64,000 nt of DNA from Octopus sinensis (Eukaryota): the NCBI RefSeq assembly GCF_006345805.1, contig NC_043005.1:96038001-96102000 (forward strand), given 5' to 3'. Shown here in pieces: positions 26,100 to 60,602 of the stretch. How positions within the stretch are numbered: position 1 is the stretch's first letter; each line of letters starts with the position of its first letter. The notes under the pieces are model-generated. The model saw only the letters and a list, made by a program, of their open reading frames with translations, made no database searches and had not been told where the DNA came from. A program made the translations under genes and the position numbers.

Positions 26100-26700
26100 T
26101 GAGCAGCTCCTATTAAACTGCTTAACCTGTACCAGCATGGAAAACAGACATTAAACAATGATGGTGATGATGATGATGATGACGACAACGACATCCTATT
26201 GGTCTCTCTTTTTTATTGGTATCTCGCTTATCTGTGCCCCCCACACAATAATCAAGGGGGTTGCAGACTGAGGGGTTTGGTGGCCAGATGTGAGGGGTGG
26301 TGTGGTCACAGAAATTGTCTGACCACCATGACTGGGTTCTCCTGCATGTGTGGCATGGTGCATAATCCTGTTGCCAGATGTAGGGCCTTCCAACAGCCAC
26401 CCTCTTGATCCAGGGTAACACTACCTCCTCCAGGCACTTGATGTAGGCCTCCGTGTTGAGTGTGAGGTTGTGTGCGGAGATGAATGGAGGCATAACGTCA
26501 CCATCACTAGTGATCACTCCAAACACCATGATGTTGACAGGATGTTTGATTTTTATCACTAAGTAAATGCACTGTCCTCAAATCAACACCCAAACACTCT
26601 GAAATGTTCGTATTGGTCTGAATGCCAAGCAGTACAGCATGTCTTTTCCAAATTACTGGCAGAGTGAATTGCATCATGGTGCTGTTTTTCTCACAGACAG
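26100..26700 (-). mobile_element. Tc1/mariner-type DDD/E transposase fragment in ASB intron 3
   Basis: ORF 26122-26559: IMVFGVITSDG, WQQDYAPCH, IWPPNPSVCNPLDY. Confidence 0.85.
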
Positions 26701-27540
26701 TGCTCAACTGACCCTACTATACTGTGTAGTCAACAAAGAGAAGAGAGAAGGAGAGTGAGGGAGCGGAGAGAAAGAGAGTAAGGGAGAAGAGGGAAAGAGA
26801 ATAGGGGTGAAAAGATAAAGGAGTGAAGAGAAGTAGGAGGAGGGGAGGAGGTTAGATGAAGAGGGGAGGAGAGTTGAGCCCAAATGACGTAAAAGAGCAA
26901 AGAGAGAAGATTAATCCCTGTTCACGGCGCAAACGGGAGTCCGGATGACCTCTGTGCAAGGACAATTCGAACACAGACAGGTGTTGCAAGGAGTAACCGG
27001 TGGAGCGGAAATGGCATGAGACTGGAGTGTCATTGCTGAGGCGGATGTCTCGGAGGTGTTCTGCGAACCGGTCAGCCAAGCAGCGTCCCGTTTGTCCGAT
27101 GTACAGGGAATGGCAGAGAGAGCAGGAGATGCAATAGATGATATTGCTGGAGGTGCAGGTGAAGGAGTCAATGATGCGATAGGGTCGATGATGGGTGCCG
27201 GTGAGGAGAGTGGTGTTGGAGAGGTAAGGGCAAGTGCGGCAGCGTGGGCGGGAGCAGGGGAACGAGCCAGGTTGGGAGGTAGGGTCAGGGAAGAAGCTGT
27301 GGACCAAGAGGTCTCGTAGGTTATGGGCTCGTTAGAAGGAGGGGAGGGGTCGGTTAGGGAAGAGGTGTGAAGTGGACGGGTCGGACTGGAGATGTTGGAA
27401 AGCTCAGAGAATGGTGCGTTGGAGAGATAGGGTGGTGGGGTGTTAGGTGAGGGGAAAATGCAGGCGGGAGACTGCAGGGCAGGTTCGGGGGGGGGGGGAG
27501 CAGATGCACGGTCCACGGAACGTGCTCTGGCAAGGGCAAT
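26700..27540 (-). mobile_element. Penelope-like element fragment encoding GIY-YIG endonuclease with Zn-finger cysteines
   Basis: ORF 26852-27307: CSRPRCRTC...FTCTSSNIIYCISC..C..LYIGQTGRCLADRFAEHLRDIR. CT-rich downstream region; abuts a TA run at 27540. Confidence 0.85.
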
Positions 27541-27895
27541 ATATATATATTCTAAATAATAACTATTCTAATTTTGTGATATATCTTCTATTTTGTAACA
27601 ATATAATTTATACAGTGATAATTTAATTTTATAATATACCATATATATAGTTGTATAGAAGTCAACTTTTTGAGACACATTTTGAAATCTATATTTAGGA
27701 GGTCAAATACACCCCAAACCTGTGGGTTTTGTCTAGACCCATGTTAGAATCCACAATCTTATTCCTGTAGGCCAAACACTGCAACCATTGGGCCACATAT
27801 TTGCACATCACAATATATAATTAACCAAAATGAATACATTTATAAAATGAAATATCCTTTAAAAAATTTGATGAAGGCTGCAAAATGTGACTCAC

Positions 27896-30339: not shown

Positions 30340-30850
30340 AAAAATTTAGAAAATGTTGTAGCTATATCGGGAGATAATACTGCAGTGAACAAATCTATAG
30401 CCATTGATTGGATGTGCCTCTCATAAATTCAATCTAGCTGTTTCTGCTTATCTTGACAAGCAGGAAGTTCTGCTTGATAAAATTAATATGTTGATGGGCA
30501 AGGTAAAGTCATTAAAACTTGCAGGTAAACTGTGGGAAAAAAAGCCTTTGCAACCTATACAAAGAAATAAAACCTGTTGGTCCAGTACTTATAACATGAT
30601 TGAGAAGTACATCCAACTCAAGCCATTTTTAGACTCGTTTCAAGGTGATCCAAAGCTGGTTGATGATCTGTTGACTCCACATGATCATAATGATCTGCAG
30701 ACTCTAAAATATAATTTAGGAAAGTTAAGCTCAGTAACAGTCACTTTGCAAAGAACAGAAATAGATTTGGGAGATGCTCAAATTCTTTTTGACAAAATTC
30801 TAGCATTATATCCTTATGAGGAGTTTTAAAAATATTTGCTTCCATTAGCA
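30340..30850 (+). mobile_element. hAT-like transposase fragment in ASB intron 1
   Basis: ORF 30404-30829: IGCASHKFNLAV (CxxH) and RNKTCWSSTYNMIE (R.WxS..M) motifs. Confidence 0.7.
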
Positions 30851-40154: not shown

Positions 40155-40736
40155 CATGGTTTCTTGAGCTGGATGCCCTTCCTAACACCAATCCAGCATT
40201 CTAAAAGGCTGTTAAACACAGACTTGATCATCTCATTTCAGGACTGTGTATCAGGTTAAGAACTCTAGACTTAACAACCATGCCATTGATTTAACAACCT
40301 ACTGTAGGGTTAACAATCTTGCTATAGGGTTAACTACTCCACTGCACAAAAAATATTTCGTGTTAAGAGAATAATGAAAGAAATCAAAACAGGTTCCATC
40401 TATCTTGATTCATTTTACTCCAGGGACAAGGAATGTTCTCTAGTCATGGTTTCTTGAGCTGGATGCCCTTCCTAACACCAATCCAGCATTCTAAAAGGCT
40501 GTTAAACACAGACTTGATCATCTCATTTCAGGACTGTGTATCAGGTTAAGAACTCTAGACTTAACAACCATGCCATTGATTTAACAACCTACTGTAGGGT
40601 TAACAATCTTGCTATAGGGTTAACTACTCCACTGCACAAAAAATATTTCGTGTTAAGAGAATAATGAAAGAAATCAAAACAGGTTCCATCTATCTTGATT
40701 CATTTTACTCCAGGGACAAGGAATGTTCTCTAGTCA
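40155..40736. repeat. Perfect 290-bp tandem duplication
   Basis: CATGGTTTCTTGAGCTGG starts at 40155 and 40445; the copies appear identical by eye. Confidence 0.9.
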
Positions 40737-44328: not shown

Positions 44329-44446
44329 TCAATGATGTATACTCTTTAATTTAGAAACATAATTTACAAATAGATGTTGTGAACTGGCATTTGTGAAAAT
44401 ATCCTTAACTTCATCCAAGCTAGAACATTCTTGTATTTGCAAGGCA
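44329..44446 (-). CDS. RWDD3: RWDD3 last coding exon (ALQIQECSSLDEVKDIFTNASSQHLFVNYVSKLKSIHH*)
   Basis: Acceptor TTGTTATTTCAG|T completes the phase-2 codon from exon 4; aligns by eye with the RWDD3 C-terminus; TGA at 44331-44329. Total CDS 903 nt = 300 aa. Confidence 0.85.
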
Positions 44447-44915
44447 CTGAAATAACAAAATAAATGCACTTTTAAAGGAAAACTTTTCTTTTAGCAAATT
44501 TGTCATTTATGACTTTAAGATAAAAAGAAAAAAGTGAACAGACAGAAATAATCAATTTACTAATTTTCTAGAGTAAATGACTTATTATGAGCAGGGCAGG
44601 CATTCTCTAATAATAAGTATTTCATTAGCTTGCAATATTTGCGATTTATAAACTAATATTTTTATTAATTGGTTTATTAAGCTAGTATTTGGTGTGAAGA
44701 AAGTTTGCACATAAAATTATGATGGAATGTCCAGGGGTGGCTGTGTAGTAATGAGTTGGTTTTTCAACCACATGGTTCACACTGCATGGTACCTAGGGGA
44801 AGTGTCTTCTACTATAGCCCCAGGCTAACCAAAGCCCCAGGCTAACCAAAGCCCCAAAGCCTTGTGAGTGGATTTGGTAGACAGAAACCAAAGATTCATA
44901 TATATATATATATAT

Positions 44916-47900
44916 ATTATATAAAAGGGCTTAGTAAAATAAATTACTTTGCCGCATACTGAACTCGTTAGAAATAGCAGCTAAAAAAACTTTTTATAAA
45001 ACTATTTCTAACACTTAAAGAAAACCTCTCTCATATAGTGTTTGCTCAATTCAACTCAAGGAAGTATGGGGGTAGAGACATTAAAAAATCAAATGCAAAG
45101 GTTTTAACCCACGCTGGTGGAAAGGGGAGAGCAGAAATTCTTCGCTTGCATATTTGAGTTTGTTGGCACTGTTAGTTTGGAACAGATCTTCAGAAGCGAT
45201 AACAAGCCGAAAGGGTATGCTCCCATTTTCAGTGTTTTCAGATTCAAACAAGGGCATTCTGAGCTGATGAGAGAAGGGTCGATTTTGACTAATCTTGAAA
45301 CGTACGTACTCAAATAACCTTTGCATTTGATTTTTTAATGTCTCTACCCCCATACTTCCTTGAGTTGAATTGAGCAAACACTATATGAGAGAGGTTTTCT
45401 TTAAGTGTTAGAAATAGTTTTATAAAAAGTTTTTTTAGCTGCTATTTCTAACGAGTTCAGTATGCGGCAAAGTAATTTATTTTACTAAGCCCTTTTATAT
45501 AATGTAATAATTTGAATTCGCCTTAAATGGTCCTTTGCATACTGAATACTTGGTGAAATTGATTAATTGATTAATTAATTTTACCCTCAATTGTTGAAAT
45601 TATATAATTCATCTCTCTCTACTTAATGTCTCGGATTTTACCGAAAAAAACATAGTGTTTGCTGATTTTAACCCACGCTGGTGGAAGGGGAGAGCAGAAA
45701 TTCTTCGCTTGCATATTTGAGTTTGTTGGCACTGTTAGTTTGGAACAGATCTTCAGAAGCGATAACAAGCCGAAAGGGTATGCTCCCATTTTCAGTGTAT
45801 TCAGATTCAAACAAGGGCATTCTGAGCTGATGAGAGAAGGGTCGATTTTGACTAATCTTGAAACGTACGTACTCAAATAACCTTTGCATTTGATTTTTAA
45901 TGTCTCTACCCCCATACTTCCTTGAGTTGAATTGAGCAAACACTATATGAGAGAGGTTTTCTTTAAGTGTTAGAAATAGTTTTATAAAAAGTTTTTTTAG
46001 CTGCTATTTCTAACGAGTTCAGTATGCGCAAAGTAATTTATTTTACTAAGCCCTTTTATATAATGTAATAATTTGAATTCGCCTTAAATGGTCCCTTTGC
46101 ATACTGAATACTTGGTGAAATTGATTAATTAATTAATTATTTTACCCTCAATTGTTGAAATTATAATTCATCTCTCTCTACTTAATGTCTCGGATTTTAC
46201 CGAAAAAAACATAGTGTTTGCTGATTTTAACCCACGCTGGTGAAAGGGGAGAGCAGAAATCTTCGCTTGCATATTTGAGTTTGTTGGCACTGTTAGTTTG
46301 GAACAGATCTTCAGAAGCGATAACAAGCCGAAAGGGTATGCTCCCCCATTTCAGTGTTTTCAGATTCAAACAAGGGCATTCTGAGCTGATGAGAGAAGGG
46401 TCGATTTTGACTAATCTTGAAACGTACGTACTCAAATAACCTTTGCATTTGATTTTTTAATGTCTCTACCCCCATACTTCCTTGAGTTGAATTGAGCAAA
46501 CACTATATGAGAGAGGTTTTCTTTAAGTGTTAGAAATAGTTTATTTAAAAAGTTTTTTTAGCTGCTATTTCTAACGAGTTCAGTATGCGGCGGCAAAGTA
46601 ATTTATTTTACTAAGCCCTTTTATATAATGTAATAATTTGAATTCGCCTTAAATGGTCCCTTTGCATACTGAATACTTGGTGAAATTGATTAATTAATTA
46701 ATTAATTTTACCCTCAATTGTTGAATTATAATTCATCTCTCTCTACTTAATGTCTCTCGGATTTTACCGAAAAAAACATAGTGTTTGCTGATTTTAACCC
46801 ACGCTGGTGGAAAGGGGAGAGCAGAAATTCTTCGCTTGCATATTTGAGTTTGTTGGCACTGTTAGTTTGGAACAGATCTTCAGAAGCGATAACAAGCCGA
46901 AAGGGTATGCTCCCATTTTCAGTGTATTCAGATTCAAACAAGGGCATTCTGAGCTGATGAGAGAAGGGTCGATTTTGACTAATCTTGAAACGTACGTACT
47001 CAAATAACCTTTGCATTTGATTTTTTAATGTCTCTACCCCCATACTTCCTTGAGTTGAATTGAGCAAACACTATATGAGAGAGGTTTTCTTTAAGTGTTA
47101 GAAATAGTTTTATAAAAAGTTTTTTTAGCTGCTATTTCTAACGAGTTCAGTATGCGGCAAAGTAATATTATTTTACTAAGCCCTTTTATATAATGTAATA
47201 ATTTGAATTCGCCTTAAATGGTCCCTTTGCATACTGAATACTTGGTGAAATTGATTAATTAATTAATTAATTTTACCCTCAATTGTTGAAATTATAATTC
47301 ATCTCTCTCTACTTAATGTCTCGGATTTTACCGAAAAAAACATAGTGTTTGCTGATTTTAACCCACGCTGGTGGAAAGGGGAGAGCAGAAATTCTTCGCT
47401 TGCATATTTGAGTTTGTTGGCACTGTTAGTTTGGAACAGATCTTCAGAAGCGATAACAAGCCGAAAGGGTATGCTCCCATTTTCAGTGTTTTCAGATTCA
47501 AACAAGGGCATTCTGAGCTGATGAGAGAAGGGTCGATTTTGACTAATCTTGAAACGTACGTACTCAAATAACCTTTGCATTTGATTTTTTAATGTCTCTA
47601 CCCCCATACTTCTTGAGTTGAATTGAGCAAACACTATATGAGAGAGGTTTTCTTTAAGTGTTAGAAATAGTTTTATAAAAAGTTTTTTTAGCTGCTATTT
47701 CTAACGAGTTCAGTATGCGGCAAAGTAATTTATTTTACTAAGCCCTTTTATATAATGTAATAATTTGAATTCGCCTTAATGGTCCCTTTGCATACTGAAT
47801 ACTTGGTGAAATTGATTAATTAATTAATTAATTTTACCCTCAATTGTTGAAATTATAATTCATCTCTCTCTCTACTTAATGTCTCGGATTTTACCGAAAA

Positions 47901-50900
47901 AAACATAGTGTTTGCTGATTTTAACCCACGCTGGTGGAAAGGGGAGAGCAGAAATTCTTCGCTTGCATATTTGAGTTTGTTGGCACTGTTGGGAACAGAT
48001 CTTCAGAAGCGATAACAAGCCGAAAGGGTATGCTCCCATTTTCAGTGTTTTCAGATTCAAACAAGGGCATTCTGAGCTGAAGAGAGAAGGGTCGATTTTT
48101 GACTAATCTTGAAACGTACGTACTCAAATAACCTTTGCATTTGATTTTTTAATGTCTCTACCCTCATACTTCCTTGAGTTGAATTGAGCAAACACTATAT
48201 GAGAGAGATTTTCTTTAAGTGTTAGAAATAGTTTTATAAAAAGTTTTTTTAGCTGCTATTTCTAACGAGTTCAGTATGCGGCAAAGTAATTTATTTTACT
48301 AAGCCCTTATATAATGTAATAATTTGAATTCGCCTTAAATGGTCCCTTTGCATACTGAATACTTGGTGAAATTGATTAATTAATTAATTAATTTTACCCT
48401 CAATTGTTGAAATTATAATTCATCTCTCTCTAATTAATGTCTCGGATTTTACCGTAAAAAAACAGAGTGTTTTGCTGATTTTAACCCACGCTGGTGGAAA
48501 GGGGAGAGCAGAAATTCTTCACTTGCATATTTGAATTGGTTGGCACTGTTAGTTTGGAACAGATCTTCAGAAGCGATAACAAGCCGAAAGGGTATGCTCC
48601 CATTTTCAGTGTTTTCAAATTCAAACAAGGGCATTCTGAGCTGATGAGAGAAGGGTCGATTTTGACTAATCTTGAAACGTACGTACTCAAATAACCTTTG
48701 CATTTGATTTTTTAATGTCTCTACCCCCATACTTCCTTGAGTTGAATTGAGCAAACACTATATGAGAGAGATTTTCTTTAAGTGTTAGAAATAGTTTTAT
48801 AAAAAGTTTTTTTAGCTGCTATTTCTAACGAGTTCAGTATGCGGCAAAGTAATTTATTTTACTAAGCCCTTTTATATAATGTAATAATTTGAATTCGCCT
48901 TAAATGGTCCCTTTGCATACTGAATACTTGGTGAAATTGATTAATTAATTAATTATTTTACCCTCAAATGTTGAAATTATAATTCATCTCTCTCTACTTA
49001 ATGTCTCGGATTTTACCGAAAAAAACATAGTGTTTGCTGATTTTAACCCACGCTGGTGGAAAGGGGAGAGCAGAAATTCTTCGCTTGCATATTTGAGTTT
49101 GTTGGCACTGTTAGTTTGGAACAGATCTTCAGAAGCGATAACAAGCCGAAAGGGTATGCTCCCATTTTCAGTGTTTTCAGATTCAAACAAGGGCATTCTG
49201 AGCTGATGAGAGAAGGGTCGATTTTGACTAATCTTGAAACGTACGTACTCAAATAACCTTTGCATTTGATTTTTTAATGTCTCTACACCCATACTTCCTT
49301 GAGTTGAATTGAGCAACACTATATGAGAGAGGTTTTCTTTAAGTGTTAGAAATAGTTTTATAAAAAGTTTTTTTAGCTGCTATTTCTAACGAGTTCAGTA
49401 TGCGGCAAAGTAATTTATTTTACTAAGCCCTTTTATATAATGTAATAATTTGAATTCGCCTTAAATGGTCCCTTTGCATACTGAATACTTGGTGAAATTG
49501 ATTAATTAATTAATTAATTTTACCCTCAATGTGTTGAAATTAATCATCTCTCTACTTAATGTCTCGGATTTTACCGAAAAAAACATAGTGTTTGCTGATT
49601 TTAACCCACGCTGGTGGAAAGGGGAGAGCAGAAATTCTTCGCTTGCATATTTGAGTTTGTTGGCACTGTTAGTTTGGAACAGATCTTCAGAAGCGATAAC
49701 AAGCCGAAAGGGTATGCTCCCATTTTCAGTGTTTTCAGATTCAAACAAGGGCATTCTGAGCTGATGAGAGAAGGGTCGATTTTGACTAATCTTGAAACGT
49801 ACGTACTCAAATAACTTTGCATTTGATTTTTTAATGTCTCTACCCCCATACTCCTTGAGTTGAATTGAGCAAACACTATATGAGAGAGGTTTTCTTTAAG
49901 TGTTAGAAATAGTTTTTAAAAAGTTTTTTTTAGCTGCTATTTCTAACGAGTTCAGTATGCGGCAAAGTAATTTATTTTACTAAGCCCTTTTATATAATGT
50001 AATAATTTGAATTCGCCTTAAATGGTCCCTTTGCATACTGAATACTTGGTGAAATTGATTAATTAATTAATTAATTTTACCCTCAATTGTTGAAATTATA
50101 ATTCATCTCTCTCTACTTAATGTCTCGGATTTTACCGAAAAAAACATAGTGTTTGCTGATTTTAACCCACGCTGGTGGAAAGGGGAGAGCAGAAATTCTT
50201 CGCTTGCATATTTGAGTTTGTTGGCACTGTTAGTTTGGAACAGATCTTCAGAAGCGATAACAAGCCGAAAGGGTATGCTCCCATTTTCAGTGTATTCAGA
50301 TTCAAACAAGGGCATTCTGAGCTGATGAGAGAAGGGTCGATTTTGACTAATCTTGAAACGTACGTACTCAAATAACCTTTGCATTTGATTTTTTAATGTC
50401 TCTACACCATACTTCCTTGAGTTGAATTGAGCAAACACTATATGAGAGAGGTTTTCTTTAAGTGTTAGAAATAGTTTTATAAAAAGTTTTTTTAGCTGCT
50501 ATTTCTAACGAGTTCAGTATGCGGCAAAGTAATTTATTTTACTAAGCCCTTTTATATAATGTAATAATTTGAATTCGCCTTAAATGGTCCCTTTGCATAC
50601 TGAATACTTGGTGAAATTGATTAATTAATTAATTAATTTTACCCTCAATTGTTGAAATTATAATTCATCTCTCTCTACTTAATGTCTCGGATTTTACCGA
50701 AAAAAACATAGTGTTTGCTGATTTTAACCCACGCTGGTGGAAAGGGGAGAGCAGAAATTCTTCGCTTGCATATTTGAGTTTGTTGGCACTGTTAGTTTGG
50801 AACAGATCTTCAGAAGCGATAACAAGCCGAAAGGGTATGCTCCCATTTTCAGTGTTTTCAGATTCAAACAAGGGCATTCTGAGCTGATGAGAGAAGGGTC

Positions 50901-53900
50901 GATTTTGACTAATCTTGAAACGTACGTACTCAAATAACCTTTGCATTTGATTTTTTAATGTCTCTACCCCCATACTTCCTTGAGTTGAATTGAGCAAACA
51001 CTATATGAGAGAGGTTTTCTTTAAGTGTTAGAAATAGTTTTATAAAAAGTTTTTTTAGCTGCTATTTCTAACGAGTTCAGTATGCGGCAAAGTAATTTAT
51101 TTTACTAAGCCCTTTTATATAATGTAATAATTTGAATTCGCCTTAAATGGTCCCTTTGCATACTGAATACTTGGTGAAATTGATTAATTAATTAATTAAT
51201 TTTACCCTCAATTGTTGAAATTATAATTCATCTCTCTCTACTTAATGTCTCGGATTTTACCGAAAAAAACATAGTGTTTGCTGATTTTAACCCACGCTGG
51301 TGGAAAGGGGAGAGCAGAAATTCTTCGCTTGCATATTTGAGTTTGTTGGCACTGTTAGTTTGGAACAGATCTTCAGAAGCGATAACAAGCCGAAAGGGTA
51401 TGCTCCCATTTTCAGTGTTTTCAGATTCAAACAAGGGCATTCTGAGCTGATGAGAGAAGGGTCGATTTTGACTAATCTTGAAACGTACGTACTCAAATAA
51501 CCTTTGCATTTGATTTTTTAATGTCTCTACCCCCATACTTCCTTGAGTTGAATTGAGCAAACACTATATGAGAGAGGTTTTCTTTAAGTGTTAGAAATAG
51601 TTTTATAAAAAGTTTTTTTAGCTGCTATTTCTAACGAGTTCAGTATGCGGCAAAGTAATTTATTTTACTAAGCCCTTTTATATAATGTAATAATTTGAAT
51701 TCGCCTTAAATGGTCCCTTTGCATACTGAATACTTGGTGAAATTGATTAATTAATTAATTAATTTTACCCTCAATTGTTGAAATTATAATCATCTCTCTC
51801 TACTTAATGTCTCGGATTTTACCGAAAAAAACATAGTGTTTGCTGATTTTAACCCACGCTGGTGGAAAGGGGAGAGCAGAGAATTCTTCGCTTGCATATT
51901 TGAGTTTGTTGGCACTGTTAGTTTGGAACAGATCTTCAGAAGCGATAACAAGCCGAAAGGGTATGCTCCCATTTTCAGTGTTTTCAGATTCAAACAAGGG
52001 CATTCTGAGCTGATGAGAGAAGGGTCGATTTTGACTAATCTTGAAACGTACGTACTCAAATAACCTTTGCATTTGATTTTTTAATGTCTCTACCCCCATA
52101 CTTCCTTGAGTTGAATTGAGCAAACACTATATGAGAGAGGTTTTCTTTAAGTGTTAGAAATAGTTTTATAAAAAGTTTTTTTAGCTGCTATTTCTAACGA
52201 GTTCAGTATGCGGCAAAGTAATTTATTTTACTAAGCCCTTTTATATAATGTAATAATTTGAATTCGCCTTAAATGGTCCCTTTGCATACTGAATACTTGG
52301 TGAAATTGATTAATTAATTAATTAATTTTACCCTCAATTGTTGTTGAATTAAATTATAATTCATCTCTCTCTACTTTGTCTCGGATTTTACCGAAAAAAA
52401 CATAGTGTTTGCTGATTTTAACCCACGCTGGTGGAAAGGGGAGAGCAGAAATTCTTCGCTTGCATATTTGAGTTTGTTGGCACTGTTAGTTTGGAACAGA
52501 TCTTCAGAAGCGATAACAAGCCGAAAGGGTATGCTCCCATTTTCAGTGTTTTCAGATTCAAACAAGGGCATTCTGAGCTGATGAGAGAAGGGTCGATTTT
52601 GACTAATCTTGAAACGTACGTACTCAAATAACCTTTGCATTTGATTTTTTAATGTCTCTACCCCCATACTTCCTTGAGTTGAATTGAGCAAACACTATAT
52701 GAGAGAGGTTTTCTTTAAGTGTTAGAAATAGTTTTATAAAAAGTTTTTTTAGCTGCTATTTCTAACGAGTTCAGTATGCGGCAAAGTATTTATTTTTTTA
52801 CTAAGCCCTTTTTATAATGTAATAATTTGAATCGCCTTAAATGGTCCCTTTGCATACTGAATACTTGGTGAAATTGATTAATTAATTAATTAATTTTACC
52901 CTCAATTGTTGAAATTATAATTCATCTCTCTCTACTTAATGTCTCGGATTTTACCGAAAAAAACATAGTGTTTGCTGATTTTAACCCACGCTGGTGGAAA
53001 GGGGAGAGCAGAAATTCTTCGCTTGCATATTTGAGTTTGTTGGCACTGTTAGTTTGGAACAGATCTTCAGAAGCGATAACAAGCCGAAAGGGTATGCTCC
53101 CATTTTCAGTGTTTTCAGATTCAAACAAGGGCATTCTGAGCTGATGAGAGAAGGGTCGATTTTGACTAATCTTGAAACGTACGTACTCAAATAACCTTTG
53201 CATTTGATTTTTTAATGTCTCTACACCCATACTTCCTTGAGTTGAATTGAGCAAACACTATATGAGAGAGTTTTCTTTAAGTGTTAGAAATAGTTTTATA
53301 AAAAGTTTTTTTAGCTGCTATTTCTAACGAGTTCAGTATGCGGCAAAGTAATTTATTTTACTAAGCCCTTTTATATAATGTAATAATTTGAATTCGCCTA
53401 AATGGTCCCTTTGCATACTGAATACTTGGTGAAATTGATTAATTAATTAATTAATTTTACCCTCAATTGTTGAAATTATAATTCATCTCTCTCTACTTAA
53501 TGTCTCGGATTTTACCGAAAAAAACATAGTGTTTGCTGATTTTAACCCACGCTGGTGGAAAGGGGAGAGCAGAAATTCTTCGCTTGCATATTTGAGTTTG
53601 TTGGCACTGTTAGTTTGGAACAGATCTTCAGAAGCGATAACAAGCCGAAAGGGTATGCTCCCATTTTCAGTGTTTTCAGATTCAAACAAGGGCATTCTGA
53701 GCTGATGAGAGAAGGGTCGATTTTGACTAATCTTGAAACGTACGTACTCAAATAACCTTTGCATTTGATTTTTTAATGTCTCTACCCCCATACTTCCTTG
53801 AGTTGAATTGAGCAAACACTATATGAGAGAGGTTTTCTTTAAGTGTTAGAAATAGTTTTATAAAAAGTTTTTTTAGCTGCTATTTCTAACGAGTTCAGTA

Positions 53901-54043
53901 TGCGGCAAAGTAATTTATTTTACTAAGCCCTTTTATATAATGTAATAATTTGAATTCGCCTTAAATGGTCCCTTTGCATACTGAATACTTGGTGAAATTG
54001 ATTAATTAATTAATTAATTTTACCCTCAATTGTTGAAATTATA
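44916..54043 (+). repeat. Tandem array of 16 x ~563-bp hammerhead-ribozyme-containing units (non-LTR retrozyme / Penelope pLTR-like multimer) in RWDD3 intron 4
   Basis: Sixteen CTGA(T/A)GA...GAAACGTACGTA motifs spaced 558-568 bp (mean ~562.5). Units are nearly identical. The array is flanked by (TA)n and its left end is an inverted copy of part of the unit. Confidence 0.95.
45245..45329 (+). ncRNA. Type I hammerhead ribozyme (first of 16 copies)
   Basis: Stem I UGAG/CUCA extended by AUU/AAU, AAGG/CCUU and CAAA/UUUG. Core CUGAUGA at 45264-45270; stem II GAGA/UCUU plus GGUC/GACU, loop GAUUUU; GAAA at 45297-45300; stem III AC-GUAC-GU; predicted cleavage GUA after 45308. Other predicted sites after 45871, 46430, 46998, 47562, 48122, 48685, 49247, 49805, 50366, 50928, 51491, 52054, 52622, 53185, 53746. 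Confidence 0.85.
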
Positions 54044-54052
54044 TATATATAT

Positions 54053-54119
<67 letters not shown>

Positions 54120-54160
54120 GCATATATATATGTGTGTGTGTGTATATATATATATATGTA

Positions 54161-54714
54161 TCTATATATACAAAACTGAGAATGTGTGTCTGTCTGTCTG
54201 ACTGTAAATCCCTAACACTTGAGAACTACACAACCAATTTCATTCAAATTTTACACATGCCTCACTTAGGGTCCATGTAGTGTCATGGGTAAAAAAAATG
54301 TTCAACTTCTTGCCTACAGAGAGCCAATAGCAATATTATATCTTCTCCACTATTTCACTATTACATGTCAAAAGTGAAACAAAAACATCTCTCTATTGTA
54401 ATGTCACATGCTTTCACTTTAATACTTTCATTTTAATACTGACACTATTAAAGTGAAACTATTATATAACAGAGATGAACTGTAACTGGACATCCATTAT
54501 GCTAGAAGATCTACTATGGTCTTATATGCTACACCACTGGTTTTAAATACATATTAATCAAATTAATATTCAATTTTTCACCCTTATTATTTTAAATTCA
54601 AATTTACATGTATATATATATATATATATAGATGTATACATATAGATGTATATATCATGGGCTAAGAACTTTTGCCAAGAGCTTTGCACAGAACCTCCAA
54701 GGGCCAACAGCTAG
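54161..54714 (+). mobile_element. Non-autonomous Helitron-like element next to the ribozyme array
   Basis: 5' TCTATATATACAAAACTGAGAATGTGTGTCTGTCTGTCTG...; degenerate 3' ...GGGCCAACAGCTAG. Confidence 0.55.
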
Positions 54715-54805
54715 CCAATCATCAGACCTGTATTTGTATATGGAGATGAATTTATAAACCTGAAACATATACACATCATATTTACAGTAAAATAAAACAT
54801 TTTAC

Positions 54806-54933
54806 CTTCGTATTATATTCAAACTGTCTTTCAGATATGGCTCTTCACACAAAACTGTCATCATCTTCTCTTTGCACCCAACACCTCTGGAATCAACATC
54901 CACACAAACTGTCTTGTGTTGGACTAGATATGA
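54806..54933 (-). CDS. RWDD3: RWDD3 coding exon 4 (SYLVQHKTVCVDVDSRGVGCKEKMMTVLCEEPYLKDSLNIIR)
   Basis: Acceptor CTTCTTCAG|, donor AG|GTAAA, 128 nt, phase 0/2. VDVDS.G..CKEKM motif of RWDD3. Confidence 0.92.
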
Positions 54934-55073
54934 CTGAAGAAGATTGAAAACCAATTAAAAGCATTCAGTGAAGATTAAGTGTAAAGTAGCTTAATACTGC
55001 AGCATTTAATTACAGTCCTTTACATCCAGAGTTCCTTTCAATGAAGGGAGTGTAAAAATTGATAAAATATATT

Positions 55074-56190
55074 AGCTAACAAATACTGGGGTGTTATATC
55101 CTTTTCACTCATAAAATATATGAGCTAACAAATACTGGGGTGTTATATCCTTTTCACTGATAAAATATATGAGCTAACAAATACTGGGGTGTTATATCCT
55201 TTTCACTGATAAAATATATGAGCTAACAAATACTGGGGTGTTATATCCTTTTCACTGATAAAATATATGAGCTAACAAATACTGGGGTGTTATATCCTTT
55301 TCACTGATAAAATATATGAGCTAACAAATACTGGGGTGTTATATCCTTTTCACTGATAAACTATATGAGCTAACAAATACTGGGGTGTTATATCCTTTTC
55401 ACTGATAAAATATATGAGCTAACAAATACTGGGGTGTTATATCCTTTTCACTGATAAACTATATGAGCTAACAAATACTGGGGTGTTATATCCTTTTCAC
55501 TGATAAAATATATGAGCTAACAAATACTGGGGTGTTATATCCTTTTCACTGATAAACTATATGAGCTAACAAATACTGGATTGTTATATCCTTTTCACTG
55601 ATAAACTATATGAGCTAACAAATACTGGGGTGTTATATCCTTTTCACTGATAAACTATATGAGCTAACAAATACTGGGGTGTTATATCCTTTTCACTGAT
55701 AAAATATATGAGCTAACAAATACTGGGGTGTTATATCCTTTTCACTGATAAAATATATGAGCTAACAAATACTGGGGTGTTATATCCTTTTCACTGATAA
55801 AATATATGAGCTAACAAATACTGGATTGTTATATCCTTTTCACTGATAAACTATATGAGCTAACAAATACTGGGGTGTTATATCCTTTTCACTGATAAAA
55901 TATATGAGCTAACAAATACTGGATTGTTATATCCTTTTCACTGATAAACTATATGAGCTAACAAATACTGGATTGTTATATCCTTTTCACTGATAAACTA
56001 TATGAGCTAACAAATACTGGATTGTTATATCCTTTTCACTGATAAACTATACGAGCTAACAAATACTGGGGTGTTATATCCTTTTCACTGATAAACTATA
56101 TGAGCTAACAAATACTGGGGTGTTATATCCTTTTCACTGATAAACTATATGAGCTAACAAATACTGGGGTGTTATATCCTTTTCACTGAT
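55074..56190. repeat. 49-bp minisatellite, ~23 copies, in RWDD3 intron 3
   Basis: Unit GAGCTAACAAATACTGGGGTGTTATATCCTTTTCACTGATAAAATATAT; period 49 (e.g. 55122 and 55171); two recurrent variants. Confidence 0.95.
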
Positions 56191-56299
56191 GTATGGCTTT
56201 GTGCCAATCTCAGAAATCATTATTATAAATATTACATCAGAAGCAATTAACTACTGGTGATGATGATACATGAAGACATGATGTTATGTTAAAAATTAC

Positions 56300-56691
56300 C
56301 TTTAAATTGTTGTGTTCTCCAATAAGGAAAAGTAATATAGTCTTCTTAAAAAATATTAGTTGACCACTTAACTGGAAATCTCTGCACCATTTCTTGATAA
56401 ATTTAATATATTTTGCTTTAGCTCTCATATGGTCAATATGAATCAATAAGGTCCAATTTTGAACATCCTTAATTCCTGTTTGACTACCAATGTTCTGAGA
56501 TGTCAGAGACTTAGCTTTCAAGTTCTTGGTGTGTGATGATGGTGGTGGTGGCAATGGTGATGAAGACTGGGTATCTGTCACAGAGTTCTCCCTGTGTGTT
56601 GCAAGTTGGACACAGTCAGATGTGTTGGAAGAGTGTAAATCTTGTATAAGGTCTTTAGCATAATTTATCAAATCAAGCAATAATGGACTTC
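56300..56691 (-). CDS. RWDD3: RWDD3 coding exon 3 (LLIHIDHMRAKAKYIKFIKKWCRDFQLSGQLIF)
   Basis: Acceptor TTCCTGCAG|, donor AAG|GTAAT, 392 nt, phase 1/0. Closely resembles human RWDD3 [20 protein letters not shown] (from memory). Confidence 0.93.
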
Positions 56692-60221: not shown

Positions 60222-60602
60222 AGGCGCAGGAGTGACTGTGTGGTAAGTAGCTTGCTTACCAACCACATGGTTCTGGGTTCAGTCCCACTGCGTGGCACCT
60301 TGGGCAAGTGTCTTCTACTAAAGCCCCAGGCCGACCAAAGCCTTGTGAGTGGATTTGGTAGACGGAAACTGAAAGAAGCCCGTCGTATATATGTATATAT
60401 ATGTGTGTGTTTGTCCCCACAAAATTGCTTAACAACCGATGCTGGTGTGTTTACGTCCTCGTAACTTAGCGGTTCGGCAAAAGTGACCGATAGAATAAGT
60501 ACTAGGCTTACAAAGAATAAGTCCTGGGGTCGATTTGCTCGACTAAAGGCGGTGCTCCAGCATCGCCGCAGTCAAATGACTGAAACAAAAGAGTAAAGAG
60601 TA
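60222..60602 (+). mobile_element. tRNA-derived SINE, family A (internal TA/TG microsatellite)
   Basis: tRNA-like head GGCGCAGGAGTG.CTGTGTGGTAAG...GGTTCAGTCCC and tail AAAGAGTAAAGAGTAA. Other copies at ~895-1445 (+), 8634-9748 (-, split), 15893-16232 (+), 43860-44272 (-), 44733-44900 (+, head only). Confidence 0.85.

What the first reader, a model, noticed from the sequence alone, without database searches (positions are those of the whole stretch)
45104..54043. Sixteen tandem hammerhead ribozymes: a ~563-nt retrozyme-like RNA cassette arrayed inside a gene intron
Seen: every unit contains, on the + strand, UGAG-CUGAUGA-[stem II GAGA/UCUU + GGUC/GACU]-GAAAC-GUAC-GUA^CUCA. This is the full type I hammerhead core with a GUH cleavage triplet and an extended, bulged stem I (45245-45329 in unit 1). 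Copy 6 reads CUGAAGA, which still fits CUGANGA. Known: tandem repeats with one type I hammerhead per monomer define non-LTR retrozymes (newt satellite 2, Schistosoma Sm-alpha, cricket pDo500), whose transcripts self-cleave into monomers that circularise. As I recall, most such monomers are shorter (~150-400 nt). Inference: a transcript of this array would be cut into ~563-nt monomers and could form circRNAs, making this a long, possibly undescribed cephalopod retrozyme family. Caveat: the 10.1-11.1 pair is G-U rather than G-C, which may slow cleavage.
Basis: partly seen in the sequence, partly recalled or inferred. Interest (0 to 1): 0.93.

Follow-up and report, generated by a model that had tools for sequence, protein, structure and literature searches.

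The report
Hammerhead-ribozyme retrozyme array in cephalopod intron
A 9.1-kb block of sixteen near-identical ~563-base repeats, each with a complete hammerhead self-cleaving RNA motif, lies in the last intron of a cephalopod gene; it looks like a young insertion of a known kind of parasitic element (a non-LTR retrozyme), and its borders preserve a record of how it was pasted in.

Summary
There are 16 head-to-tail copies, 558-568 nt apart and about 99% identical. Each carries on the + strand the full hammerhead core, helices I-III and a GUA^C cut site. A descriptor search finds these 16 and nothing else in the window. About 0.004 chance matches are expected per window.

The motif is atypical:
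- No Rfam hammerhead model scores it, even at E<=10.
- Pair 10.1-11.1 is G-U in every copy.
- Helix III is 2 bp with a GUAC loop, so ACGUACGU is a palindrome. This points to a double hammerhead formed between neighbouring copies, as in newt and Penelope-type hammerheads.

The block sits in the (TA)n tail of a SINE-like repeat. It starts with a 191-nt inverted partial copy whose inner end lies 7 nt from the predicted cut site. This is the insertion signature of Penelope-like elements. It fits twin-primed reverse transcription of one linear multimeric RNA.

The array fills 88% of the last intron of an RWD-domain gene and is antisense to it. The orthologous intron in Argonauta hians is about 0.68 kb and empty.

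Verdict: a new member of a known kind (non-LTR retrozyme). The 563-nt unit is within published sizes. Cleavage and circular RNA were not tested.

The parts
44730..44897 (+). SINE-like repeat copy. Its (TA)n(TG)n tail is the target site of the insertion.
   Evidence: At least 10 related copies in the window. Other copies end in ...GGTAGACGGAAACTGAAAGAAGCCCGTCGTATATATGTATATATATGTGTGTG.
44898..44912 (.). Left (AT)n flank, the 5' half of the split microsatellite target.
   Evidence: Sequence read. The boundary with the inverted arm is ambiguous by a few bases because the unit itself reads ATTATATAA there.
44913..45103 (-). Inverted partial copy, the reverse complement of monomer positions 8-198. 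Its outer end lies in a UA-rich stretch of the unit. Its inner end is 7 nt from the predicted hammerhead cut site.
   Evidence: 191-nt arm, 99% complementary to 45316-45506 and to the same segment of the other copies. Junction alignment.
45102..45103 (.). 2-nt TT microhomology at the head-to-head junction between the inverted arm (monomer position 8) and the direct array (monomer position 357).
45102..45308 (+). First direct copy, partial (monomer positions 357-563). It contains hammerhead 1 (helix I 5' arm from 45245, core 45264-45270, cut after 45308).
45309..53746 (+). Fifteen full monomers measured cut site to cut site (558-568 nt, consensus 563). They carry hammerheads 2-16. Substitutions against the consensus are about 0.4%.
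53747..54043 (+). Terminal partial copy (monomer positions 1-297). It ends in GAAATTATA and merges into (TA)n.
54040..54170 (.). Right (TA)n(TG)n flank, the 3' half of the split microsatellite.
50865..50949 (+). Representative hammerhead domain; the flanking monomer m11 (50929-51491) equals the consensus.
- Helix I: UGAG/CUCA, a C bulge, AUU/AAU, a 2x2 loop, then AAGG/CCUU.
- Core: CUGAUGA.
- Helix II: GAGA/UCUU (G10.1-U11.1), an AG/AA internal loop, then GGUCG/UGACU.
- GAAA, then helix III: A-U and C-G with a GUAC loop.
- Cleavage at GUA^C.
54806..54934 (-). Exon 4 of the host RWD-domain gene (SYLVQHKTVCVDVDSRGVGCKEKMMTVLCEE...). The donor GT is at 54805-54804.
   Evidence: tblastn with P0002 and P0016. 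Splice sites read.
44332..44446 (-). Last exon (5) of the host RWD-domain gene, preceded by the acceptor tttcag and ending in a stop codon. The intron 44447-54805 (10,359 bp) contains the whole element.
   Evidence: tblastn with P0002 residues 257-295, E = 7e-11..
26735..27535 (-). Context: a dead, 5'-truncated Penelope-like element tail (C-x4-C-x2-C linker plus GIY-YIG endonuclease) next to a (TA)n run. It shows that endonuclease-bearing PLEs have been in this genome. It has no sequence similarity to the array unit.
   Evidence: Pfam GIY-YIG E = 0.0028, below the curated cut-off. Frames and sequence. BLASTN of the unit against the window.

Best explanation
The block 44913-54043 is one young insertion of a non-autonomous, hammerhead-bearing retroelement of the non-LTR retrozyme type.

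Proposed mechanism:
1. A + strand transcript of such an array carries one type I hammerhead per 563 nt.
2. Helix III of a single motif is only 2 bp. Two neighbouring motifs therefore pair their palindromic ACGUACGU segments into an 8-bp helix III. In this double hammerhead, each core cuts the GUA^C site of its partner.
3. Cleavage releases ~563-nt RNAs with 5'-OH and 2',3'-cyclic phosphate ends. The ends are held together by the long helix I of a highly self-paired molecule, where a host RNA ligase could join them (inferred from published retrozymes).
4. This copy arose when a partly processed linear multimer was reverse-transcribed at a nicked (TA)n microsatellite. The multimer had 16 units plus 297 nt, and its 5' end lay at or near a hammerhead cut site. 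The enzyme was most likely a Penelope-like element RT/GIY-YIG endonuclease.
5. The bottom-strand end primed on the UA-rich stretch near position 297 and copied about 16 units.
6. The top-strand end primed on the UA-rich stretch near position 198 of the 5'-most unit and copied to position 8. This is twin priming.
7. The two cDNAs were joined through a TT microhomology, and positions 199-356 of the first unit were lost.

Shown here: the anatomy, the motif, the predicted folds, the junctions, and the empty orthologous intron. Inferred: catalysis, circularisation, the RNA template and the enzyme.
For: Motif:
- Complete hammerhead core and three helices in all 16 copies, with about 4e-5 chance matches expected per unit.
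- The only core substitution in the array is at N7, the one position that tolerates any base.
- Helix III (2 bp plus a 4-nt palindromic loop) matches the published description of metazoan type I hammerheads that act as dimers in tandem repeats (PMC4209133).
- The monomeric helix III is unfavourable: -12.3 kcal/mol with it, -13.3 without.
- The dimer MFE is -40.4 kcal/mol against 2 x -14.5.
- The unconstrained MFE of a 761-nt two-ribozyme transcript forms the inter-copy 8-bp helix III, with helices I and II correctly placed around the downstream core.

Retrozyme traits:
- Tandem array at 34% GC. No ORF has a homologue or a Pfam domain.
- The + strand monomer folds at -157.4 kcal/mol, z = -6.8. 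The - strand gives z = -4.4. About 60% of bases are paired.

Insertion signature:
- (AT)n | RC(198->8) | TT | 357->563 | 15 x (1-563) | 1->297 | (TA)n.
- The site is the (TA)n(TG)n tail of a SINE-like repeat.
- Tandem copies, an adjacent inverted 5'-truncated copy and a microsatellite target are features reported for Penelope-like elements (PMC8557442).
- The inner end of the inverted arm lies 7 nt from the cut site. A random end would fall that close in about 1.4% of cases.

Context:
- A PLE endonuclease fragment is in the same window.
- The orthologous last intron in Argonauta hians is about 677 bp and has no similarity to the unit and no hammerhead motif.
- Copies differ from the consensus by about 0.4% in substitutions.
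Against: - No Rfam hammerhead model matches, even at E<=10 on a 101-nt slice.
- Pair 10.1-11.1 is G-U in all copies, whereas G-C is described as highly conserved (PMC4209133).
- The 85-nt ribozyme domain is no more stable than shuffles, z = -0.27.
- The copies are about 99% identical. There is therefore no covariation or differential conservation to show selection on the motif.
- No second locus, transcript or other species could be retrieved.
- The unit shows no similarity to the only PLE fragment at hand.
- The stop of the inverted arm at position 8 could also be reverse transcriptase stalling at the base of helix I. It is a single observation.
- Assembly errors in a 9-kb array of near-identical repeats cannot be excluded. 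Many differences between copies are 1-nt indels.
Confidence: 0.68

Rival explanations
1. This is an ordinary tandem repeat (minisatellite or satellite). Its hammerhead-like motif is a relic or a chance match and does not cleave. The array grew at the DNA level, by unequal exchange or replication slippage.
For: Rfam finds no hammerhead. Pair 10.1-11.1 is a G-U wobble. Helix III is very short. No selection signal can be obtained from 99%-identical copies. A genome of a few Gb should hold on the order of 100-200 chance descriptor matches at the measured rate of 4 per 120 Mb.
Against: The chance of a full match in one given 563-nt unit is about 4e-5, and lower still with the palindromic helix III. 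The motif sits in the context where such ribozymes are known: a tandem, AT-rich, highly self-paired unit. The borders look like a retro-insertion, with an inverted arm, microhomologies and a microsatellite target, rather than slippage. There are no higher-order repeat blocks.
Confidence: 0.17
2. The array is a genuine hammerhead repeat, but it was built from a circular template (circular RNA copied by rolling-circle reverse transcription, or extrachromosomal circular DNA) and captured at a broken (TA)n site by end joining. In this reading no linear multimer or twin priming was involved.
For: Rolling-circle transposition is the model proposed in the retrozyme literature (PMC7229834; 10.64898/2026.07.22.740005). 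Both outer ends lie at internal UA-rich positions (198 and 297), not at a defined 3' end. (TA)n tracts are break-prone (my own knowledge).
Against: A circle has no 5' end, so the stop of the inverted arm 7 nt from the cut site would be a coincidence of about 1.4%. Several substitutions are shared by non-adjacent copies: T491A in m1, m3 and m9; C40A in m8 and m15; A114T in m3 and m9. That is not expected if all copies were read from one circle and then mutated independently.
Confidence: 0.2
3. The repeat is not an independent non-autonomous element. It is an amplified pseudo-LTR or terminal region of a full-length Penelope-like element that lies elsewhere in the genome.
For: Hammerheads of animal PLEs sit in their pLTRs (PMC4209133). 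Xenopus retrozyme families are sister to PLE pLTRs. The insertion has PLE-type architecture.
Against: No RT or endonuclease ORF lies in or beside the array. There is no similarity to the PLE fragment in the window. Sixteen head-to-tail units without any internal coding body is the retrozyme arrangement. This rival differs from the best explanation mainly in naming, since retrozymes are proposed to derive from pLTRs.
Confidence: 0.1

Closest known systems
Metazoan non-LTR retrozymes (Cervera and de la Pena 2020, PMC7229834; Li, Clavereau and Pollet 2026 preprint 10.64898/2026.07.22.740005)
   Same: Head-to-tail repeats with one type I hammerhead each. Low GC, non-coding, highly self-paired monomer RNA. 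Co-occurrence with Penelope-like elements. Multimer size and unit length lie within reported ranges (up to 300 units; 51-972 bp).
   Different: No cephalopod example turned up in my literature searches. The unit is longer than the 170-400 nt typical of invertebrate examples. Helix II continues beyond an internal loop, and pair 10.1-11.1 is G-U. Expression and circular RNA are unknown here.
Newt satellite 2 and axolotl retrozyme hammerheads; double hammerhead of Forster et al. 1988 (as described in PMC7229834 and PMC4209133)
   Same: Helix III is too short to be stable. A palindromic helix III and loop allow two tandem copies to form one extended helix III, so dimeric transcripts are expected to cut much better than monomers.
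   Different: The units are about 330-350 nt in amphibians against 563 nt here. The sequences are unrelated. Dimer-dependent cleavage is shown experimentally there and only predicted by folding here.
Dolichopoda cave-cricket pDo500 satellite (PMC2837043)
   Same: A roughly 500-bp tandem unit with an embedded hammerhead. Both single and double hammerhead modes have been proposed. Natural variation reaches positions 10.1 and 11.1.
   Different: pDo500 is an abundant satellite that is conserved across 12 species, with compensatory changes and shown self-cleavage. Here there is a single 16-copy locus with no comparative data.
Penelope-like elements and their pLTR hammerheads (PMC4209133; Craig et al. 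2021, PMC8557442)
   Same: Partial tandem copies, an inverted 5'-truncated copy at the upstream end, and insertion into microsatellites. Hammerheads have a small palindromic helix III, a short helix I of 4-5 bp and a long helix II.
   Different: The array has no RT/GIY-YIG ORF. The two outer ends are at different internal positions rather than at one defined 3' terminus. The (TA)n bias is documented for Naiads, which lack hammerheads. No extra unpaired base lies between A9 and 10.1.
L1 twin priming (5' inversion of LINE-1 insertions; my own knowledge, Ostertag and Kazazian 2001)
   Same: The inverted 5' segment and the direct 3' segment come from one RNA. They meet at a microhomology, with a short internal loss. 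The inner end of the inverted part marks the RNA 5' end.
   Different: A different retroelement class and enzyme. The template here is a multimeric ribozyme RNA, and priming is on UA-rich internal stretches rather than on a poly(A) tail.

Membership tests
Hammerhead ribozyme (type I) | Conserved core C3 U4 G5 A6 N7 G8 A9 / G12 A13 A14 / A15.1-U16.1 and H17 that is not G | tested here: met
   CUGAUGA ... GAAA ... GUA^C in all 16 copies. Copy 6 has A at N7.
Hammerhead ribozyme (type I) | Three helices around the core, with helix I open (type I topology) | tested here: met
   Helix I is 4 bp, a C bulge and 3 more bp, and it continues. Helix II is 4 bp, a 2x2 loop and 5 bp. Helix III is 2 bp with a GUAC loop. 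The rest of the monomer closes helix I.
Hammerhead ribozyme (type I) | G10.1-C11.1 Watson-Crick pair | tested here: not met
   G10.1-U11.1 wobble in every copy. G10.1 itself is kept. Natural variation at this pair is reported in crickets (PMC2837043).
Hammerhead ribozyme (type I) | Match to the curated covariance models (Rfam hammerhead families) | tested here: not met
   No hammerhead hit at gathering score or at E<=10, on the window, on the 10-kb region or on a 101-nt slice. The likely causes are the 18-nt extension of helix II, non-consensus helix II pairs and the internal loops of helix I. I could not measure this.
Hammerhead ribozyme (type I) | Site-specific, Mg2+-dependent self-cleavage | not testable with these tools
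   Needs in vitro transcription of monomeric and dimeric constructs.
Dimeric (double) hammerhead of tandem repeats | Unstable helix III (1-2 bp) with a palindromic loop, able to form an extended inter-copy helix III | tested here: met
   ACGUACGU is a perfect palindrome. The dimer MFE is -40.4 against 2 x -14.5 kcal/mol. The inter-copy helix forms in the unconstrained MFE of a two-copy transcript. The definition is taken from PMC4209133.
Non-LTR retrozyme | Tandem repeats, each with one type I hammerhead; no LTR; no coding capacity | tested here: met
   16 copies. The only ORFs of at least 90 aa are on the - strand and have no Pfam domain or homologue.
Non-LTR retrozyme | Low GC (<45-50%) and highly self-paired monomer RNA | tested here: met
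   GC is 34%. MFE is -157.4 kcal/mol, z = -6.8. About 60% of bases are paired, in both linear and circular folds.
Non-LTR retrozyme | Expressed as linear and circular monomer RNAs | not testable with these tools
   No transcriptome of the species could be reached. Protein-based routes to Logan contigs found nothing.
Non-LTR retrozyme | Multiple dispersed loci (a mobile family) and co-occurrence with PLEs | tested here: inconclusive
   Only this locus was seen. No other copy is in the 64-kb window or in the metagenome and viral collections. A PLE endonuclease fragment is present in the window. PLEs are reported as recently active in Octopus vulgaris (PMC13282606).
Penelope-like element (autonomous) | ORF with a telomerase-like RT and a GIY-YIG endonuclease between pLTRs | tested here: not met
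   No such ORF lies in or next to the array.
PLE-type insertion architecture | Partial tandem, an adjacent inverted 5'-truncated copy, and a microsatellite target | tested here: met
   compared with the description in PMC8557442.

The most novel reading that the evidence does not exclude
This is a currently active cephalopod retrozyme family with two notable properties. First, its hammerhead is functional although it lies outside the curated models (G10.1-U11.1, helix II extended past an internal loop). Second, its insertion borders are a molecular fossil: they would show that Penelope-type integration uses hammerhead-cleaved, linear multimeric RNA through twin priming on microsatellite ends. 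That would be direct structural evidence for how animal retrozymes are mobilised, which so far is inferred from co-occurrence and pLTR homology.
Probability: 0.25. Interest if true: 0.6.

Novelty: new member of a known kind. Interest (0 to 1): 0.4.

Why it matters
Hammerhead-bearing tandem repeats are known in many animal phyla, including a mussel. A cephalopod example therefore extends a list rather than opening a category.

Three points give it some value:
1. It is a complete, very young insertion (about 0.4% substitutions) with both borders intact. Few retrozyme insertions have been described at this resolution. The inverted arm that stops 7 nt from the predicted cut site offers a testable link between ribozyme cleavage and the template used for integration.
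2. The motif escapes every Rfam hammerhead model. Covariance-model surveys would miss this family, and possibly similar ones.
3. The array enlarges an intron from about 1.2 kb to 10.4 kb. That is one concrete example of how such elements inflate cephalopod genes compared with the compact Argonauta orthologue.

Tried and rejected
- Rfam at gathering score on the whole window, at E<=10 on 44500-54600, and at E<=10 on 45235-45335: no hammerhead or other ribozyme on either strand. Only microsatellite-driven microRNA noise and weak snoRNA or CRISPR-repeat chance hits appeared.
- The spurious 110-aa minus-strand ORF of the unit was used as a handle to pull related repeats from public assemblies: no homologue and no exact product on record.
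- Exact-pattern scans of metagenome and viral contigs with the ribozyme and with a GC-rich part of the unit: nothing.
- BLASTN of the unit against the rest of the window and against the Argonauta locus: only chance hits of 26 nt or less in the window and 32 nt or less in the Argonauta locus.
- A relaxed hammerhead / min-hammerhead descriptor on the window, L001 and L002: no further motifs. None lies next to the PLE fragment.
- tRNA search for a tRNA-derived origin: none.
- Protein searches with an ankyrin exon and the RWD exon in the word-indexed database gave one unnamed hit and none. The exhaustive HMMER search was needed to find the Argonauta orthologue.
- A literature search for the SINE-like sequence found nothing.
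- An alternative register with an unpaired base after A9, as in PLE min-hammerheads, was considered and rejected. It breaks helix II at the third pair.
- I considered whether the minus-strand ORF could be a gene and rejected it. It has no domain or homologue, and frameshifts from 1-nt indels differ between copies.
Full report

Yes. The repeat finder reports 15-16 copies of every part of the unit, with start-to-start spacings of 557-569 nt, between 44.9 and 54.0 kb. Tandem Repeats Finder misses the array only because its longest period is 500.

Anchoring on the ribozyme gives 16 copies of CTGANGA-GAGAAGGGTCG... and 16 copies of GAAACGTACGTA^C. The predicted cuts fall after 45308, 45871... 53746, and are 558-568 nt apart. 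The 15 full monomers, measured cut to cut, have a 563-nt consensus. They differ from it by 0-8 substitutions each (32 in 8,445 nt, about 0.4%) plus short indels, many of them single bases in homopolymers.

It also has one extra T in loop 2.

**2. Is the motif more than chance?**

I wrote a descriptor asking for the full core, helix I of at least 4 bp, helix II of at least 4 bp, helix III of at least 2 bp with a 3-8 nt loop, H17 not G, and G-U allowed.

- It hits exactly the 16 copies and nothing else on either strand. The same is true when it is relaxed to PLE-type minimal motifs.
- In 120 Mb of first-order Markov sequence with the window's composition it found 4 distinct cores. That is about 0.004 per window and about 4e-5 per unit on both strands.
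- The 16 copies count as one event. A genome of a few Gb would contain on the order of a hundred chance matches. The weight of the argument therefore comes from the motif sitting in a tandem, AT-rich, self-paired repeat, not from the motif alone.

**3. What speaks against a working ribozyme**

- Rfam 15 gives no hammerhead hit at gathering score, none at E<=10 on the 10-kb region, and none at E<=10 on a 101-nt slice around unit 1.
- Pair 10.1-11.1 is G-U in all copies. Cervera and de la Pena list the G10.1-C11.1 pair among the hallmarks of genuine motifs (PMC4209133). Compensated changes at this pair do occur in cricket pDo500 (PMC2837043).
- The 85-nt domain is no more stable than shuffles, z = -0.27.
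- With 99% identity among the copies, there is no covariation or differential conservation to analyse. The single core substitution falls on N7, the only free core position. That is one data point.

**4. Architecture of the motif**

- In the full-monomer MFE, helix I is C1-G518, U2-A517, C3-G516 and A4-U515, then a bulged C514, then three A-U pairs, then a 2x2 internal loop, then CCUU/AAGG. The rest of the molecule branches from it.
- Helix II is GAGA/UCUU, an AG/AA internal loop, and then a 5-bp hairpin.
- Helix III is only A15.1-U16.1 and C15.2-G16.2, closed by GUAC. Forming it costs energy (-12.3 kcal/mol with it, -13.3 without).
- The eight bases ACGUACGU are a perfect palindrome.

[quoted passage not shown] Amphibian retrozymes behave this way in experiments (PMC7229834).

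Folding agrees. Two 85-nt domains cofold at -40.4 kcal/mol against 2 x -14.5 kcal/mol, with the inter-molecular 8-bp helix and swapped helix I arms. The unconstrained MFE of a 761-nt transcript spanning two adjacent motifs pairs the two ACGUACGU segments, which lie 563 nt apart. The downstream core, its helix II and a helix I made with the upstream cut-site arm are then correctly arranged.

The expected mode is a double hammerhead, and single motifs should be poor.

**5. Retrozyme traits**

- The monomer has 34% GC.
- The + strand RNA folds at -157.4 kcal/mol against -117.9 +/- 5.8 for shuffles (z = -6.8). The - strand gives z = -4.4.
- About 60% of bases are paired, whether the fold is linear or circular.
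- The only ORFs of at least 90 aa are on the - strand. They are broken differently in different copies and have no Pfam domain or homologue.
- These are the features listed for non-LTR retrozymes (PMC7229834).
- Unit length is not exceptional. pDo500 is about 500 bp, and the 2026 survey reports 51-972 bp, with arrays of up to 300 units.

**6.

Immediately upstream of the array lies a 191-nt inverted copy (44913-45103), 99% complementary to the same segment of the direct copies. Aligned to the consensus, the insertion reads:

left flank ...GATTC(AT)n | reverse complement of positions 198 down to 8 | TT overlap | positions 357-563 | 15 x (1-563) | positions 1-297 | (TA)n(TG)n.

- Both outer ends lie in UA-rich stretches of the unit (TTTTATATAATG and GAAATTATAATT) and merge into the microsatellite.
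- The host sequence is the (TA)n(TG)n tail of a SINE-like repeat. Other copies of this repeat in the window end the same way, which gives an approximate empty site.

The geometry also fits twin priming, step by step:

1. The right-flank bottom-strand 3' end primes on the RNA near position 297 and copies leftward through about 16 units.
2. The left-flank top-strand 3' end primes near position 198 of the 5'-most unit and copies toward the RNA 5' end.
3. The two cDNA ends (...GGTT-3' and ...TTAAAA-3') anneal through TT/AA.
4. Positions 199-356 of the first unit are lost.

Under this model the inner end of the inverted arm marks the 5' end of the template. It lies at position 8, which is 7 nt from the predicted cut. 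A random end would be that close in about 1.4% of cases.

This is circumstantial evidence that the template had been cut by the ribozyme. Reverse transcriptase stalling at the base of helix I is an alternative explanation.

Several substitutions are shared by non-adjacent copies: T491A in m1, m3 and m9; C40A in m8 and m15; A114T in m3 and m9. They fit a multimeric transcript of a heterogeneous master array better than a single circle read 16 times.

**7. Genomic context**

An exhaustive HMMER search with the ORF at 56237-56680 (-) found a 296-aa protein, P0002. It is annotated 'RWD domain-containing protein 3-like [Argonauta hians]'. The next cluster includes a protein from Acanthosepion pharaonis. 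P0002 has a Pfam RWD domain.

- tblastn maps five exons on the minus strand: 62365-62300, 58651-58433, 56692-56330, about 54934-54806, and 44446-44332.
- Canonical splice sites bound the last intron, 44447-54805.
- The element (9,131 bp) fills 88% of that 10,359-bp intron.
- The ribozyme strand is antisense to the gene. The host pre-mRNA therefore carries only the complement, and a separate + strand transcript is required. I did not test any promoter.

In the Argonauta hians locus the same five exons span 3 kb (L002). The last intron is about 677 bp, without similarity to the unit and without a hammerhead motif. The downstream ankyrin/SOCS-box gene is syntenic. The insertion is therefore lineage-specific.

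On the calibration used for Octopus vulgaris transposons (Jukes-Cantor distance 0.09 is about 25 My; PMC13282606), 0.4% divergence is roughly 1 My. This is a rough figure, and it assumes that the differences are not assembly errors.

The exact species could not be determined. 'Cephalopod' rests on the two best named homologues.

**8. A possible partner**

The window holds a dead, 5'-truncated PLE tail at about 26735-27535 (-). It has the NLRDLLV motif, a C-x4-C-x2-C linker and a GIY-YIG domain. The Pfam match (E = 0.0028) is below the curated cut-off. Its 5' end abuts a (TA)n run.

It shares no sequence with the array unit and has no hammerhead nearby. It shows only that endonuclease-bearing PLEs have lived in this genome. 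PLEs are reported as recently active in O. vulgaris: 31 families and 336 recent insertions.

**9. Comparison and verdict**

The element works like, and passes the testable criteria of, a non-LTR retrozyme with a dimer-type hammerhead.

- As a hammerhead, it fails two sequence-level criteria: the G10.1-C11.1 pair and the Rfam models.
- Three functional criteria could not be tested: cleavage, circular RNA, and multiple loci.
- I found no paper in the library that links hammerheads or retrozymes with cephalopods. Molluscs are already represented by Mytilus.

I file it as a new member of a known kind. I give 0.4. Most of that is for the well-preserved insertion borders and for the fact that standard covariance models miss the motif.

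Noticed in passing
window 26735-27535 (-): A dead, 5'-truncated Penelope-like element tail. It has an NLRDLLV motif, a C-x4-C-x2-C linker and a GIY-YIG endonuclease domain (Pfam E = 0.0028, below the cut-off), and in-frame stops upstream. Its 5' end abuts a (TA)n run at about 27540-27555.
   Followed up: partly
window 44730-44897 and at least 10 other places (e.g. 60227-60369, 44268-44131, 9742-9563, 2275-2138): A SINE-like repeat family whose copies end in a (TA)n(TG)n microsatellite. The array sits in the (TA)n of one copy. No tRNA-like part was found by ARAGORN.
   Followed up: partly
window 55060-56190: A 49-nt minisatellite, 23 copies, 97% matches, inside intron 3 of the RWD-domain gene.
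   Followed up: no
window 40155-40736: A perfect (100%) tandem duplication of a 290-bp unit, so very recent or an assembly artefact.
   Followed up: no
window 62365-44332 (-) versus L002 10001-12982: A five-exon RWD-domain gene spans about 18 kb here but about 3 kb in Argonauta hians. It is followed on the same strand by an ankyrin/SOCS-box-type gene in both (window exons 36638-27840). Synteny is conserved and the introns are strongly inflated by repeats.
   Followed up: partly
window 26122-26559 (-) and 30404-30829 (+): ORFs that by eye resemble a Tc1/mariner transposase C-terminal part and a hAT transposase fragment. Pfam gave no hit at E<=0.01, so these identifications are unverified.
   Followed up: partly
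window 54060-54173: Sub-threshold Rfam hits to mir-297, mir-3149, mir-1277 and others. They are produced by the (TA)n(TG)n microsatellite and are not microRNA genes.
   Followed up: yes
window 45309-53746: Substitutions shared by non-adjacent monomers: T491A in m1, m3 and m9; C40A in m8 and m15; A114T in m3 and m9; G86A in m6 and m7. Monomer m6 carries 8 substitutions, the most of any copy. No higher-order repeat blocks are seen.
   Followed up: partly
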